64,000 nt of DNA from Salisapilia sapeloensis CBS 127946. Lineage: Eukaryota; Protista; Oomycota. The notes under the pieces were generated by a model. That model was not told where the DNA came from. It made no database searches and was given only the letters and a program-made list of their open reading frames with translations. How positions within the stretch are numbered: position 1 is the stretch's first letter; each line of letters starts with the position of its first letter. The translations under genes and the position numbers were made by a program. Where the stretch lies: contig JAADVB010000034.1 of NCBI GenBank assembly GCA_023334545.1, positions 1 through 64,000 of the forward strand, written 5' to 3'. This document shows positions 14,075 to 63,822 of the stretch, piece after piece.

Positions 14075-16947
14075 TTACATTGTATTGGTGGGAATCAAAG
14101 CCGCAAAAGCTTCCAGTCTTGACGCAACAAAGGAAGCGGATGGCCGCTTGGTAGCATCCTGCGACCAACAGTCTTGGATCAAGTCTCTTATCATCTGTGG
14201 AGTATAACCAATAAAATAGGATTCGAAGAGAGTTTATACGGCCTTCTTACTGGCGGGGTTGATCGGGTAAAAGATGGTCGCTTTCGATGTTGAAGGACGA
14301 TTATGGGAATCATTGCAGGGCTCACACCACTGAATGGAGACGAGCACTCGCTAATCTCCCACAATATCACGCCAAGGCTATAAATGTCAGCAGCTACTGT
14401 ATACGCTTGACTTTGCATCACTTCACTGTGAAAGGTAACTTGTTGAGCTATCGTTTGTGTACAAAACAAAGAAATACGTACGGTGCCATCCATTGTAATG
14501 TACCGCGACAACCTGTCATAAAACCCGGCCCAAGTGATGCTGCTTTTCGCGAGATGCCGAAGTCTGTATAGAATATCGGCTTAAGCTGCGGGTAAGTAAA
14601 GTCACCGAATAGTAGAAGAAATACCTGCTAGTTTGACTCTTCCTTCGCTTGTAACCAAGAGGTTCCTTTGACGAATAAGTGTGTATACAGAATATGATCA
14701 CGTGCAGAAACACTTACAGTGATTTCAAGTCTCTGACAAAATGGAAAGTAGTAGATTAGATTGGTATTGGTAAATGAATGAACTGTTCGTTGCACCTATG
14801 GATGATATTGAAAGAATGCAAGAAAGCTAGTCCTTGAGCAGCATCGAGCTGTAGTTTCAACCGGAAGTATGAGTCAAAGCTCGCTGATACATTTAGTATG
14901 TGACACTAACCATCATTTTTGCTCGCAGTGTCCAAGAAGTAGATATAGATGCAAGCCGTTGATCGGCTTGATGTGCATTTTGAATCAAATCGCTGTGATC
15001 AGTATGTTAGACGTACTATGGTGCAAATTTTCGTGAATCTGAGTAATGCTTACAAGAGGGAGTATGGGAGATACTCCAAAGCTATCGCCATTGGCTCCAT
15101 GCAAATCCCAAAGAAGAGAACTAGGGATGGATGCGACCCGAGCGAAGTATGCATTGTTACCTCATTCACAAATTCTCGTTCCGCAGTAGTATTGCCTTGA
15201 CTCATGAATCTACGTGGATAAAATTAAGTTGTATGTCTGCTATAGTCGATATACTGTCAAACGAACGTCTTTAGCGCAATGTCTGTTCCTCTCCACTTAG
15301 CTTTATACACTTGGCAGCTACGTACAAGGCTGTTGAGTTACGTATTAAAATGCAATAAGTCGGAATAAGGATTCCACCTCGTGCCAGCACCTACACATTG
15401 CTCTACAGCAAACTCCTTTTGACATATGGAAGCTGTTGTTAAACTATTCTATCCTCATTTAGGCGATATTTGCATACCGATTTCGACATTTGTCGGATAT
15501 TTCTAGTCTTCAACAAGTTTTTCAGCTGGATGCTTTCAGCCGGTAGCTGACATACAGACTTTTGTAAAGTCTTGTTAATTGCGTCCGTGCTAGGATGAAC
15601 AGGTGCAGCAATTAACCCATAAGCACGGTCGATGAGGCCATTTGCATTTGTGCCATGGGAAAGCTCTTGCTGCAGACTGTTTAAGTCGAGCAAGTCAACG
15701 TTTATTGGCTTTACAGAGGTTAGCTCCTCTGTTGCCTCTACAGTATGAAAGCTAGGTCAGGGAGCTATAAATTCAAGTACAGCTTTGACGAACCGATAAT
15801 GAAGAGACATAATGGCATCGATACTGGTAGTTTAGCTACCAGATCATTCACATCCTGTTCCAGCATATATTCGATTATTATCAATGCTGTCTACACTTGA
15901 GTATATGACTCCTACCTTGTCAGTTTTGATAAAGACCCCGGTATCCGAACTACGAATTGCAAATTGCCTTAAAATCATTTACTCTGATCCTGTGAATACT
16001 TTTATACCTATGAAACTCCTGAAGCGTGATCTCTTTTGGTATCTCTCGAAATATTATTTTGGCTTTGCTTCGGAGTATCGATATACTCATGGTCTTCCGA
16101 TCAATTCGCAAGCGCGCTTGCTCATCTTTCCACTTGAGTATGACGACCAAAGCATCTATTCCGCTATTAAGATTTCAAAGTGCATCGGTATCAATTGTAG
16201 ATTACCACTGTGATTTATCGTATAATAATTGGGTGCGGATGGCGTGAGTTGCTGAGAAGGATTCTCCTGATCTAGTGCCGAAGGAAGCGACTTCTGCATT
16301 GCACTTGCCATATCTTCCAAAAAATCCGTTAAATTGTAAGGTGGAGACCACCCATCTTCCAGCCAAGGCACATGGAGATGCCCGTTATATTGTAAAATAT
16401 CTGGAAGATGCTATGGAAACAAAGTACATTGGCGACTAGGTAGTAAAATACGACGAGTAAGCTTACTTCAAACCCAGAAGTACATGATAGCATAGGTTCT
16501 GCAATTGGAAACTCGTTCGGAAGTCGTATAGCAACTTCCACAGCGTGAGTGGTAGAGTACGCACTTGATAAACTCTACTTTATAAATGCAATGAGCAAGA
16601 ATGATAGAAATGCTTTCAGATGAGTGACAAGTACTCGCGCGCTGGAAAACTTTATTTGCATCGCAACGGCACGCCTTCCATGCATCTCACCTCTTACACA
16701 ACCAATTCTATACCATATACACCACACATGAGCTATTCATATAAATCGTAAAGCTCAAGTGGAGAATGACTTTTGGATGCGCAAGTGAGCGTTGTGCTTT
16801 GCATAGTCCATAGCATTTTGAAGTTCTTGTTGAAGTCTCTATGCATATACTTCGTTCAAAACACTTTAAATGTGCTAGTTGTATTTGATTAGATCACACC
16901 TTGTCTAGGAAGGAGAGAGATCGTGGTCCACTTCCAGAGCTCATCAT
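14075..16947 (-). CDS. Intron-rich protein kinase: UBC-like/UEV domain, PSAP linker, PB1-like domain and TKL kinase (about 20 exons)
   Basis: Manual splicing of about 19 GT..AG introns of roughly 50-65 nt keeps one reading frame. It yields an intact kinase: VGAGTSCQVYKAKWRGTDIALK, EREFVNE, HRDLKSLN, LADFG, GTLQWMAPE, DIYSLGVILWE, CWSQDATKRP, stop at 14075. The first three introns and the start codon are the least certain. Confidence 0.85.
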
Positions 16948-61869: not shown

Positions 61870-63822
61870 TTAACGAGGTCGTCTTGCCCTCCACTGCTCC
61901 TTCTGCGTCTTGCGCTTGACAAGCTGCGCCTTCTTCTTTTGCTTAATACGCATCTCTCTCTTCGCGTCCTCCTTCTTCTGTTCCTGCGTCTTGCCTTGCA
62001 CCGCGTCCTTCTTCTTGAATCTCTCCTGACGCTTTTCCGCCGCAGTCTTCTTCTCCCCCTCCTCGTCCTCCGCCTTACCCAACAATACGTTCTCGTAATC
62101 CTCCTTGGACATCTTTCCCTTCTTTTTCTTCTTGAACAACCGTTCTTCCTCTGCAAGCTCATCCCACTCGTCTAGAATCTGCTGATGCGCTCCTTTCTTT
62201 TTCTCACGACGTCGAGGCTTCTCTTCCTCTTCCCTCTTTCGCTTCTTGTCCTTCTCCTCATGCTTCTTCTTCCTCTTCTCTTCATTCTCCTTTTCAAACT
62301 CGACCAGTTTCTTCTGTCGATCCTTCTCACGTGCCTTATCCTTGTACTTGATCTGTGTGAAGTCGACGTCCGTCGCTGGAGTGAAGTCGATCGTAGTGTT
62401 ACGAAGCTCACTGATCTTGGGTAAACGCAAGAGAGCAAAGCCTCGCGCGACAGCACCTAGGTCCAAGTCCTTGAATCGGAAGATGAACTGACACTGATGC
62501 TCTTTGTAAGACCGGACGAACGAGATAAACGCTTTCGTTCCTTTCTCTAACAAATCACGATCTTCCAGTTCCCACTTCTTTACATCTGGAAGAACGTCAC
62601 ACAGAGTATCGATTGGGAACGTCATTTCTTCACAAGGTACTTTACGTAGCTCGAGGAAGTTGATGTAAGCGTCTTCATTAGAAGAAAGGAACGAGAGAGC
62701 GGAGCCGGACCGACCGGCACGAGCTGTACGACCAACGCGATGGACGAAAAAGTTAGGATCCTGAGGTGGATCGAACTGGACGATCCAGTCAACATCCGGC
62801 AAGTCGATGCCTCTTGCAACGACATCCGTGCAGACGAGGACACCGTTGGATGCAGACGCGAACTCGTTGTAGTGTGTCGTACGCTTCTTTTGCGGCATCT
62901 TTCCATGCAGTGAGACGATGGGTGCTTCCAAATTCTCTTGAGTCGTCAATGTCGACAAGACACGTCCGAAGAAATCGACGGCATCACATGTGGAGAAGAA
63001 GACAATGAGCTTTTGGTCCTTGGCTTTCGACTGGATAAAGTGCCAGAGTGCAGACAGTCGATGCTCGTGGCCTACGAAAGCGTAATAGTTACTCAATGTC
63101 GCTGGTGTCACCTGCTTGTTGTTTGCGACTTGCACTGAGACTGTCGCTGGGTTTCGAAGTCCTGCTCGAGCAAGTGCCTTGACTTCCTGTGTCTGCGTCG
63201 CTGAAAAGAGCGCTGTTCGTCTCTGTTTCGGCAAGTGGTTTAGAATCACGTTTAAACTCTTTTCGAAACCCATGTCGAGTAGCGTATCTGCTTCATCGAG
63301 TACGAGGATGGCAAACTCTCTCGTGTCGACAGTCGAGCCAACGCATCGATCAAGCAAGTCCTGTGTTCTTCCTGGCGTTCCGACGACGATACAGCATTGG
63401 CCAGATGCATCGTGGAGTAGCTTAAGGTCATCCTGAACCTGTGTGCCTCCAACGAAGCAAAGCAGACTTACTGATTTGGCTGGTAGAGCGGCATCGACAA
63501 ATGTCTGTGCAGTATCAGCGATTTGTTTCGCCAATTCACGTGTTGGAGAGATAATCATAGAGACGAGCTTGGTTACATTGGCTTCCTTTGCTGGAGGAGT
63601 GATAGTGCCATCGGATAAAGAAGCACGTAGCAATTGGATGATTGGCAGGACGAACGCCAGTGTCTTGCCGCTGCCAGTGCATGCATCGACGCAGACATCT
63701 TTGTGCGAGAGGAAAAGAGGTATAGTAGCTGCCTGGACAGGTGTCATGTGCTCGAATTGTATCTTGTCGAGCTCCACCAGCATTTCGCTGCATAGCGGTG
63801 GTGAGACCTCGGAGAACTTCAT
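61870..63822 (-). CDS. DDX55: DEAD-box RNA helicase DDX55/Spb4 (60S biogenesis; intronless)
   Basis: MTPVQAATIPLF, TGSGKT, SPTRELA, GTPGR, LDEAD, SAT, RGIDLP, HRVGRTARAG, AFISFVRSYKEH, GFALLRLP. Confidence 0.95.
   Translation of the reverse strand: MKFSEVSPPLCSEMLVELDKIQFEHMTPVQAATIPLFLSHKDVCVDACTGSGKTLAFVLPIIQLLRASLSDGTITPPAKEANVTKLVSMIISPTRELAKQIADTAQTFVDAALPAKSVSLLCFVGGTQVQDDLKLLHDASGQCCIVVGTPGRTQDLLDRCVGSTVDTREFAILVLDEADTLLDMGFEKSLNVILNHLPKQRRTALFSATQTQEVKALARAGLRNPATVSVQVANNKQVTPATLSNYYAFVGHEHRLSALWHFIQSKAKDQKLIVFFSTCDAVDFFGRVLSTLTTQENLEAPIVSLHGKMPQKKRTTHYNEFASASNGVLVCTDVVARGIDLPDVDWIVQFDPPQDPNFFVHRVGRTARAGRSGSALSFLSSNEDAYINFLELRKVPCEEMTFPIDTLCDVLPDVKKWELEDRDLLEKGTKAFISFVRSYKEHQCQFIFRFKDLDLGAVARGFALLRLPKISELRNTTIDFTPATDVDFTQIKYKDKAREKDRQKKLVEFEKENEEKRKKKHEEKDKKRKREEEEKPRRREKKKGAHQQILDEWDELAEEERLFKKKKKGKMSKEDYENVLLGKAEDEEGEKKTAAEKRQERFKKKDAVQGKTQEQKKEDAKREMRIKQKKKAQLVKRKTQKEQWRARRPR

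What the first reader, a model, noticed from the sequence alone, without database searches (positions are those of the whole stretch)
14075..16947. Hidden ~19-intron kinase with an unusual UEV-PB1-TKL domain architecture
Seen in the sequence: a region the ORF track shows only as fragments splices into one continuous frame of roughly 590 aa with every kinase catalytic motif intact. The N-terminus (RLQQELQ..VEVAIRLPNEFPIAEP..HLPDILQYNGHLHVPWLEDGWSPPYNLTDFLEDM) follows the UBC-fold pattern (HPN..G.ICL..L..WSP) but has His where E2 enzymes have the catalytic Cys, which makes it a UEV like TSG101/Vps23. The middle (VVILKWKDEQARLRI..LRSK..F..ITL..IKTDKDV..L.LFII) resembles a PB1/ubiquitin-like beta-grasp. 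Established: PB1-kinase fusions exist (MEKK2/3, plant Raf-like B4 kinases) and UEV domains bind ubiquitin and P(S/T)AP peptides. Inference: this is a ubiquitin/ESCRT-coupled signalling kinase. I know of no described UEV-PB1-TKL family.
Basis: partly seen in the sequence, partly recalled or inferred. Interest (0 to 1): 0.88.

Follow-up and report, generated by a model that had tools for sequence, protein, structure and literature searches.

The report
Intron-rich oomycete UEV-PB1 kinase gene
A real, easily missed 19-exon oomycete gene encodes one protein that joins a catalytically dead ubiquitin-E2-like domain, an invariant PSAP motif, a PB1-like domain and an intact TKL-type kinase, an architecture I could not find described, though its function is untested.

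Summary
On the minus strand, 16947-14075, 19 exons and 18 GT-AG introns of 50-63 nt splice into a 605-aa frame with all kinase motifs intact. No RNA run was listed, so support is comparative. I modelled orthologs in four other oomycete assemblies: Pythium oligandrum, Phytophthora nicotianae, Nothophytophthora (partial) and an unnamed Logan contig. They lie in the same neighbourhood (Sybindin / kinase / HtrA / Vta1), keep the same intron positions and phases, and share a 15-nt exon encoding RDLKS.

Profile-profile comparison of the spliced five-species alignments supports both N-terminal domains. The first matches the E2 UBC core (hhalign P 6e-4; 0 of 300 column shuffles). H, F, V, N or D stands at the catalytic Cys, so it is a UEV in the broad sense. 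The second matches PB1 (P 2e-5; 0 of 300).

A PSAP motif between them is invariant in all five. PB1-kinases are known; I found no paper on a UEV-like domain fused to one.

Limits: Pfam does not reach threshold, no structure could be predicted because the spliced protein has no reference, and ubiquitin/ESCRT coupling is inference only. This is a new variant of a known kind, of moderate interest.

The parts
14075..16947 (-). Whole gene: 19 exons, 18 introns, 605 aa. Exons, high to low: 16947-16900, 16838-16771, 16707-16635, 16574-16467, 16410-16206, 16155-16008, 15949-15916, 15854-15794, 15737-15478, 15415-15378, 15317-15267, 15209-15054, 14992-14911, 14848-14796, 14732-14718, 14665-14625, 14563-14482, 14425-14251, 14194-14075.
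   Evidence: One search gives the model. Searches show the same intron positions and phases in orthologs. One search shows the P. oligandrum ortholog annotated as one gene.
16206..16838 (-). Exons 2-5, encoding the UEV-like (inactive UBC-fold) domain, residues about 17-140. The FPxxxP motif lies in exon 4. The motif LP..L..G.L.VPWL.DGW..Y.L lies in exon 5. His112 stands at the position of the E2 catalytic Cys.
   Evidence: Pfam UEV and UBC_like weak collinear hits; E2 top hits in the PDB search; protein-language-model neighbours are UQ_con; hhalign against E2 gives P 6.4e-4 with shuffle controls.
16231..16242 (-). PSAP motif (residues 156-159) between the UEV-like and PB1-like domains.
   Evidence: Invariant in all five orthologs while the surrounding linker varies.
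15794..16155 (-). Exons 6-8, encoding the PB1-like beta-grasp domain, residues about 168-248. It has an invariant K-W on strand 1 and no acidic OPCA motif.
   Evidence: hhalign against 25 verified PB1 domains gives P 2.2e-5 and probability 76%, with 0 of 300 and 0 of 200 shuffles. PB1 is the top family among language-model neighbours for two orthologs only 17-19% identical in this exon (19% in the pairwise alignment, 17% in the four-species alignment; neighbours). There is no Pfam or PDB sequence hit.
15478..15737 (-). Exon 9, a variable linker (residues about 249-335). It includes VDLLDLN at 15679-15699, a motif present as DLIDLN or DLLGLN in three other species.
   Evidence: In Phytophthora and Nothophytophthora this exon is fused to exon 10, so the linker and the kinase G-loop share one exon.
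14078..15415 (-). Exons 10-19, encoding the kinase domain (residues about 336-600): GAGTSC, IALK, HRDLKSLN, DFG, APE.
   Evidence: Pfam PK_Tyr_Ser-Thr on the pieces; PDB neighbours are TK and TKL kinases; the alignment is.
14718..14732 (-). 15-nt micro-exon encoding (R)DLKS(L) of the catalytic loop.
   Evidence: Same 15-nt exon in L001, P. oligandrum and P. nicotianae.

Best explanation
This is a single protein-coding gene of a peronosporalean-type oomycete. Shown: it encodes, from N to C terminus, a UBC-fold domain that lacks the E2 catalytic Cys and the HPN motif (a UEV in the broad sense), an invariant PSAP tetrapeptide, a PB1-like beta-grasp domain with basic residues on strand 1 and no acidic OPCA motif, a variable linker, and a TKL-type Ser/Thr kinase with every catalytic motif present. 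The architecture and its 17-18 introns are conserved in Pythium, Phytophthora and two unnamed relatives, and in the N-terminal half available for Nothophytophthora. Inferred: the kinase is catalytically active and the two N-terminal modules target and regulate it. The PB1-like domain looks like the basic type. If so, it would dock an acidic-type PB1 partner, as MEKK2/3 dock MEK5, rather than form head-to-tail polymers. The UEV-like domain would bind ubiquitin or a Pro-rich peptide non-catalytically. The adjacent PSAP would either fold back on it, as a TSG101-style cis latch, or recruit ESCRT-I Vps23. Either way, kinase activity would be linked to ubiquitin-dependent endosomal sorting.
For: Gene model. 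Conserved intron positions and phases, nine identical exon lengths and the shared 15-nt exon. Synteny Sybindin / kinase / HtrA / Vta1. One-gene annotation in P. oligandrum with the same ends. Linker and G-loop in one exon in P. nicotianae and Nothophytophthora. UBC fold; no Cys at the active-site column in five species. PB1; reference sets verified as UQ_con and PB1. PSAP invariant. Kinase motifs and TKL-like neighbours. PB1-kinase fusions, and M3K2/3 as type-2 PB1 domains that bind M2K5: PMC7051960.
Against: No transcript evidence was available. No Pfam model reaches its gathering score on the pieces: UEV scores 12-14 bits against a cutoff of 27. The annotated P. oligandrum product has only kinase families on record. 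With four sequences, the exon-5 profile lost its E2 hits in the PDB search. The hhalign probability against E2 is only 28%, although P is 6e-4 and shuffles do not reach the score. One of 300 block shuffles did reach it. No structure was predicted. Nothing tests ubiquitin, PSAP or PB1-partner binding, and the neighbouring Vta1 gene is synteny, not functional evidence.
Confidence: 0.7

Rival explanations
1. The architecture is as described, but the UBC-like domain does not bind ubiquitin or PSAP. Instead it acts as a structural, dimerisation or partner-docking module, as the RWD domain does in GCN2. On this reading the conserved PSAP is part of the fold or a docking site for something unrelated to ESCRT.
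For: The similarity to UEV and E2 is remote. The residues that form the TSG101 PTAP groove could not be assessed. The segment around PSAP (L..L.Q..P.QL.PSAP) is moderately conserved as a whole, so it may be structural. P. nicotianae has a 2-residue deletion in the PWL loop.
Against: PSAP itself is invariant in five species that are only 31-53% identical overall, while its flanks vary. The best Pfam family for three separate pieces is the TSG101-type UEV.
Confidence: 0.25
2. There are two adjacent genes, a small UEV-PB1 protein and a separate kinase, joined wrongly by the splice model.
For: There is no RNA evidence. P. nicotianae and Nothophytophthora annotations do not show a single gene here.
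Against: No in-frame stop or plausible new start separates the parts. All junction phases are conserved in four other species. Intron 9 is absent in Phytophthora and Nothophytophthora, so the post-PB1 linker runs straight into the kinase G-loop in one exon. P. oligandrum is annotated as one 590-aa product with the same ends. The P. nicotianae model is an evident chimera with TRM10 spanning HtrA and Vta1.
Confidence: 0.03
3. It is a decaying pseudogene, or a chance string of ORF fragments.
For: The syntenic site in Peronospora effusa holds only decayed remnants, so the gene can be lost.
Against: The frames are intact, without internal stops, in the window and in three full-length orthologs. All catalytic motifs are conserved, and exon lengths are conserved to the nucleotide.
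Confidence: 0.02

Closest known systems
MEKK2/MEKK3 (M3K2/3) and the wider PB1-kinase family reported in all eukaryotic kingdoms (PMC7051960)
   Same: An N-terminal PB1 domain sits on a Ser/Thr kinase. The PB1-like domain here has basic residues on strand 1 and lacks an OPCA motif, like the type-2 PB1 of M3K2/3 that docks the type-1 PB1 of MEK5.
   Different: M3K2/3 belong to the STE group, whereas this kinase has TKL-type motifs and neighbours. The Chromista PB1-kinases described in that paper carry WD40 repeats, which are absent here. None is described with a UBC-like domain ahead of the PB1.
Plant Raf-like PB1 kinases (for example At1G04700, the 'Kinase' family in PMC7051960; B4 group, from my own knowledge)
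   Same: PB1 followed by a linker and a C-terminal TKL (Raf-like) kinase. CTR1, a plant Raf-like kinase, is among the nearest solved chains to exon 18.
   Different: The plant PB1 domains keep the acidic OPCA motif and lack the strand-1 Lys (PMC7051960), the opposite of this family. They have no UEV-like domain and no PSAP.
TSG101 / Vps23 UEV domain (Pfam PF05743)
   Same: A UBC fold without the catalytic Cys. The Pfam UEV model is the best hit for three separate exon pieces, at collinear profile positions 42-69 and 84-120. From memory, the motif G.L.(V/I)PWL.DGW resembles TSG101's G.IYLPYLHEW, and TSG101 also carries its own P(T/S)AP.
   Different: There is no coiled coil and no Vps23 core or steadiness box; the C-terminus is a kinase. 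Scores are far below the Pfam threshold, and ubiquitin or PTAP binding is untested.
GCN2 (RWD domain plus kinase)
   Same: It is the known case of a UBC-superfamily, non-catalytic domain fused N-terminally to a protein kinase, where it serves as a docking module.
   Different: RWD lacks the HPN/active-site loop segment and the W-x-P helix start that this family retains (38 residues from FP to WSP, against 36 in a class-I E2). GCN2 is not a TKL kinase and has no PB1.
VPS37A N-terminal UEV-like domain (PDB 8e22)
   Same: It is the second hit of the four-species exon-4 profile, aligned over the strand plus FPxExP segment.
   Different: E = 1, so this is a lead only. VPS37A is an ESCRT-I subunit without a kinase.

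Membership tests
Eukaryotic protein kinase, TKL-type | Catalytic motifs: G-loop, VAIK Lys, alphaC Glu, HRD, DFG, APE | tested here: met
   GAGTSC, IALK, EREF..E, HRDLKSLN, DFG and WMAPE are present and conserved in four full-length orthologs. The third G-loop Gly is Cys in all four.
Eukaryotic protein kinase, TKL-type | Profile match to PK_Tyr_Ser-Thr (PF07714) and TK/TKL nearest neighbours | tested here: met
   PF07714 hits five separate exon pieces in collinear order; the best is 28 bits against a cutoff of 23. PDB neighbours of exon 18 are EGFR, MLKL, CTR1, TNNI3K, MET and ZAK. P. oligandrum and P. nicotianae products carry PF07714 on record.
Eukaryotic protein kinase, TKL-type | Placement inside the TKL group on a kinome tree | not tested
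   No full-length reference could be handed to the search tools, so no tree was built.
UBC superfamily / UEV (PF05743, PF00179 clan) | Sequence-profile similarity to the UBC core | tested here: met
   hhalign of the spliced five-species alignment against 107 verified E2 sequences gives score 30.3 and P 6.4e-4 over 73 collinear columns. Column shuffles average 13.3 (sd 2.5, max 23.3; 0 of 300); block shuffles reach it once in 300.
UBC superfamily / UEV (PF05743, PF00179 clan) | UEV definition: UBC fold without the catalytic Cys | tested here: met
   The E2 Cys column holds H, F, V, N and D in the five species, and the HPN motif is replaced by LPx.
UBC superfamily / UEV (PF05743, PF00179 clan) | Pfam gathering score for UEV or UQ_con | tested here: not met
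   On pieces only: UEV 12.7 and 14.2 bits and UBC_like 12.5 bits, against cutoffs of 27. The annotated full-length P. oligandrum product has no UEV or UQ_con hit on record. The spliced protein itself could not be scanned.
UBC superfamily / UEV (PF05743, PF00179 clan) | UBC-like three-dimensional fold; ubiquitin or P(S/T)AP binding | not testable with these tools
   The domain spans four exons, so no stop-free reference exists for structure prediction. Binding needs experiments.
PB1 domain (PF00564) | Sequence-profile similarity to PB1 | tested here: met
   hhalign of spliced exons 6-8 (five species) against 25 verified PB1 domains gives score 30.8, P 2.2e-5 and probability 76% over 67 columns, with 0 of 300 column and 0 of 200 block shuffles. 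Cross-controls score about 10.
PB1 domain (PF00564) | Pfam gathering score | tested here: not met
   Exon 6 gives no Pfam hit in any of four species, and none is on record for the P. oligandrum product.
PB1 domain (PF00564) | Type-defining residues: strand-1 Lys (type 2) or OPCA acidic motif (type 1) | tested here: inconclusive
   K-W is invariant on strand 1, and the column aligned to the PB1 Lys is K or R in four of five species. The OPCA region is not acidic. This suggests type 2, but the alignment is remote.
Chromista 'Kinase' PB1 family of PMC7051960 | PB1 plus kinase plus C-terminal WD40 repeats | tested here: not met
   The protein ends about 20 residues after the kinase domain in all orthologs, with no WD40.
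ESCRT-I subunit TSG101/Vps23 | UEV plus coiled coil plus Vps23 core (steadiness box) | tested here: not met
   PB1-like, linker and kinase follow the UEV-like domain, and no Vps23_core hit was seen.

The most novel reading that the evidence does not exclude
This is a ubiquitin- and ESCRT-I-gated kinase. On this reading the UEV-like domain and the invariant PSAP form an intramolecular latch, as proposed for TSG101's own PTAP, that holds the PB1-kinase inactive. Ubiquitinated cargo or Vps23 would compete for the latch and so couple endosomal sorting directly to a phosphorylation cascade through a PB1-docked substrate kinase. Such a signalling route has not been described in any eukaryote.
Probability: 0.12. 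Interest if true: 0.75.

Novelty: new variant of a known kind. Interest (0 to 1): 0.5.

Why it matters
PB1-kinases and UEV domains are each well known. A kinase that carries both, plus its own invariant P(S/T)AP motif, would be a compact natural link between ubiquitin/ESCRT recognition and phosphorylation. It occurs in a group that includes major crop pathogens (Phytophthora) and a biocontrol agent (Pythium oligandrum).

It also shows a practical annotation blind spot. In intron-poor oomycete genomes this 17-18-intron gene is called correctly in one assembly, as a chimera in another, and not at all in a third. Kinome surveys such as the P. infestans one list no PB1 or UEV accessory domain. The conserved 15-nt catalytic-loop exon is a useful stress test for gene finders.

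Tried and rejected
- RNA evidence: no RNA run was listed, with the whole stretch or with kind 'any'. The two other runs of the same study hold nothing alike at 80% likeness.
- Exon-5 search of 1.84 billion representative proteins: two spurious repeat proteins and one real ORF fragment, P0003. Its cluster has one member.
- Metagenome scan with the exon-5 alignment found no relative.
- phmmer and hmmsearch of single exons against PDB sequences gave nothing for exon 5 alone, E2 top hits at E about 0.1 with two sequences, noise with four sequences, and noise for the PB1 exon.
- Pfam on pieces never reached threshold.
- Exact look-up of a window ORF to name the assembly failed, and a paper search for the SRA run found nothing.
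- I could not obtain a protein id for the annotated P. oligandrum product. All usable queries are exon pieces, too short for the length window of the word-indexed search.
- Because the spliced protein has no reference and must not be typed in, Pfam, HHpred, AlphaFold and Foldseek on the whole N-terminus were left out. I replaced them with hhalign in the sandbox against reference alignments fetched by DNA pattern.
- RWD was considered and judged less likely, because the HPN-loop-to-WxP segment absent from RWD is present here.
- My first L001 exon 2/3 junction was revised after comparison with Pythium and Phytophthora.
Full report
**Observation.** The plus-strand ORF track of 14075-16947 shows only fragments. 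The minus strand carries a series of short open segments with clear kinase motifs. Reading the minus strand, I joined them with GT-AG introns. This gave 19 exons, 18 introns of 50-63 nt, 1818 nt of coding sequence and 605 aa, from ATG at 16947 to TAA at 14077-14075. The narrow intron-length range and the absence of any non-GT-AG junction are themselves unlikely for a chance assembly. The kinase motifs are complete: GAGTSC 344-349, IALK 361-364, HRDLKS 461-466, DFG 481-483 and APE 507-509.

**Transcript evidence.** None was available: no RNA run was listed. A Logan DNA assembly that is probably from the source sample is identical over the region.

**Comparative support for the model.**
- Exon 5, searched against 1.84 billion representative proteins, gave one real relative, a 185-aa ORF fragment (P0003).
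- Its 6.2-kb contig (L001, 59.5% G+C) carries Vta1, an HtrA-type protease, the UEV-like exon and a kinase piece in the window's order.
- Using Vta1 and HtrA orthologs as handles, I fetched syntenic loci. Three more orthologs turned up: Pythium oligandrum (L003), Nothophytophthora sp. (L005, cut by the contig end) and Phytophthora nicotianae (L008).
- I modelled all of them. L001 gives 595 aa with 18 introns, P. oligandrum 591 aa with 18 introns, and P. nicotianae 596 aa with 17 introns. None has an internal stop.
- Intron positions and phases are the same throughout the three complete orthologs and the modelled part of Nothophytophthora.
- Exons 7 and 10-16 and 18 have identical lengths, including a 15-nt exon that encodes RDLKS.
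- In P. nicotianae and Nothophytophthora intron 9 is missing. The post-PB1 linker therefore runs into the kinase G-loop within one exon, which fixes the window's exon 9/10 junction and ties the N-terminal half to the kinase.
- NCBI's P. oligandrum annotation calls one 590-aa gene with exactly my start and stop.
- Pairwise identity among the five is 31-53%.
- The neighbourhood TOM70-like TPR / Sybindin / kinase / HtrA / Vta1 / ... / anoctamin is shared.

**Organism.** A DDX55-type helicase in the window is 66-70% identical to Phytophthora, Hyaloperonospora and Pythium proteins, 57-59% to Saprolegniales and 51% to Albugo. No closer hit exists. The window therefore comes from an oomycete on the peronosporalean side that is not among the annotated proteomes.

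**First domain.**
- On single exons, Pfam gives only sub-threshold hits, and apart from one weak NOG1 hit (E 0.22, L001 exon 4) they all fall in one clan. UEV PF05743 matches profile positions 84-120 for window exon 5 (E 0.12) and 42-69 for L001 exon 4 (E 0.042). UBC_like PF23009 matches window exon 4. Across four species, each exon 4 hits UEV or UBC_like.
- A two-species exon-5 profile ranks three E2 enzymes among its seven PDB hits, aligned at the active-site loop. That signal was lost with four species.
- A four-species exon-4 profile touches the VPS37A UEV-like domain at E = 1.
- Protein-language-model neighbours of exon 5 are UQ_con in 82 of 100 cases.
- The domain is split over four exons, so it has no reference and I did not type it in. 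Instead I built the test in the sandbox. A DNA pattern for HPNI...G.ICLDI fetched giant-virus contigs. Their ORFs gave 107 distinct E2 sequences, and four samples score 174-184 bits on UQ_con.
- hhalign of the spliced five-species N-terminal alignment against this set gives score 30.3 and P 6.4e-4 over 73 collinear columns, from the strand before FPxxxP to the helix after W..Y.L.
- Column shuffles of the query average 13.3 (sd 2.5, max 23.3; 0 of 300). Eight-column block shuffles reach the score once in 300. The reversed query scores 12.5.
- The E2 catalytic Cys aligns to H, F, V, N and D in the five species, and HPN aligns to LPx.
- The domain is therefore a non-catalytic UBC fold, a UEV in the broad sense. 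Nothing resembling E2 helices 3-4 was aligned after helix 2. From my own knowledge, that is also a TSG101-UEV trait.

**PSAP.** Sixteen to thirty residues after that helix, PSAP is invariant in all five species while its flanks vary. This confirms an earlier first-stage note.

**Second domain.**
- Exon 6 has no Pfam or PDB sequence hit.
- Language-model neighbours put PB1 first, followed by other beta-grasp families. This holds both for the window and for L001, which is only 17-19% identical in this exon.
- I fetched PB1 references with a DNA pattern for DEDGD.V....D[DE][DE]L from metagenome contigs. I kept 25 non-redundant stop-free segments. Six samples exceed the PF00564 threshold.
- hhalign of spliced exons 6-8 against them gives score 30.8, P 2.2e-5 and probability 76% over 67 of 81 columns.
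- Column shuffles average 10.2 (max 19.7; 0 of 300). Block shuffles average 14.6 (max 25.9; 0 of 200). The cross-comparisons (UEV-like against PB1, PB1-like against E2) score about 10.
- The family keeps K-W on strand 1, with a further K or R in four of five species, and has no acidic OPCA motif. This points to a type-2 (basic) PB1, as in M3K2/3, p67phox and Par6 (PMC7051960).

**Kinase.** PF07714 matches five pieces in order. Exon 18's nearest solved chains are EGFR, MLKL, CTR1, TNNI3K, MET and ZAK. HRDLKSLN and GT.QWMAPE are TKL-style. All catalytic residues are conserved, so I expect an active enzyme. The third G-loop glycine is Cys in every ortholog.

**Distribution.**
- The gene is absent beside Vta1 or HtrA in P. 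infestans, Saprolegnia diclina, S. parasitica, Aphanomyces euteiches and [Pythium] brassicae. This is inconclusive, because the Sybindin-kinase-HtrA-Vta1 arrangement is not kept in those loci.
- In Peronospora effusa the syntenic Sybindin-HtrA gap holds only decayed remnants (E 0.003 for a 19-residue kinase stretch), so the gene was probably lost there.

**Annotation state.** The gene is called correctly in P. oligandrum. In P. nicotianae it is a 768-aa chimera with TRM10 that spans HtrA and Vta1. It is unannotated in Nothophytophthora.

**Literature.** The P. infestans kinome lists neither PB1 nor UEV/UBC among kinase accessory domains (PMC3019232). PB1-kinases are reported in all five kingdoms, and those of Chromista carry WD40 repeats (PMC7051960). 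Searches for UEV-kinase fusions found none.

**Mechanism.** The anatomy is shown; function is inferred. I consider it most likely that this is an active TKL kinase whose PB1-like domain docks an acidic PB1 partner, and whose UEV-like domain with the adjacent PSAP provides ubiquitin- or ESCRT-related targeting or autoinhibition. The rival that the UBC-like module is a plain docking domain, as RWD is in GCN2, cannot be excluded.

**Verdict.** This is a new variant of a known kind, of moderate interest.

Noticed in passing
L010:6051-8001 (Peronospora effusa CP090811.1): The syntenic gap between Sybindin and HtrA is only about 1.95 kb. It holds decayed remnants of the kinase: 19 residues at 84% identity to P. 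nicotianae (E 0.003), plus a weaker linker piece. The gene seems to have been lost in this downy mildew.
   Followed up: partly
L008:4122-12294 and 7283-7735 (Phytophthora nicotianae LNFO01006116.1): The kinase exons are annotated as part of a 768-aa chimera with TRM10 that spans HtrA and Vta1. A 150-aa plus-strand ORF without any family, between the kinase gene's start and HtrA, is also called as a gene.
   Followed up: partly
L005:1-2841 and 3250-5135 (Nothophytophthora sp. Chile5): The ortholog is not annotated at all, and the neighbouring HtrA and Vta1 are fused into one 464-aa model.
   Followed up: partly
window 15679-15699; L003, L005 and L008 linker exons: Just after the PB1-like domain, VDLLDLN / DLIDLN / DLLGLN is conserved in four of five species but not in L001. 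It resembles a clathrin-box or DLL-type motif. This is from memory and was not tested.
   Followed up: no
L001:4468 (intron 10) and L008:5698 (intron 8): Two orthologous introns begin with GC instead of GT (GC-AG) while keeping position and phase.
   Followed up: no
window 15378-15415 and orthologs: The third glycine of the kinase G-loop is Cys in all four full-length orthologs (G.G.SC.VY).
   Followed up: no
window 1-64000: Most other genes in the window read as long uninterrupted ORFs of up to 4409 aa. The 18-intron kinase is therefore an outlier in intron density, and G+C dips to 0.42-0.44 across it. Intergenic spacers are very short: 46 bp to Sybindin and 91 bp to HtrA.
   Followed up: partly
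window 61870-63822 and whole window: The organism is an oomycete with no closer annotated relative than about 70% identity (DDX55 helicase) or 47% (Vta1). Its Logan assembly is only about 24 Mb.
   Followed up: partly
window 4351-5625: A second kinase (Pkinase, residues 131-411 of the ORF) has about 130 unassigned N-terminal residues. Another first-stage note calls this region DIX-like; I did not examine it.
   Followed up: no
P0001, P0002: The two top hits of the exon-5 search are long tandem-repeat translations whose scores pile up from many weak repeats. They are not relatives.
   Followed up: yes
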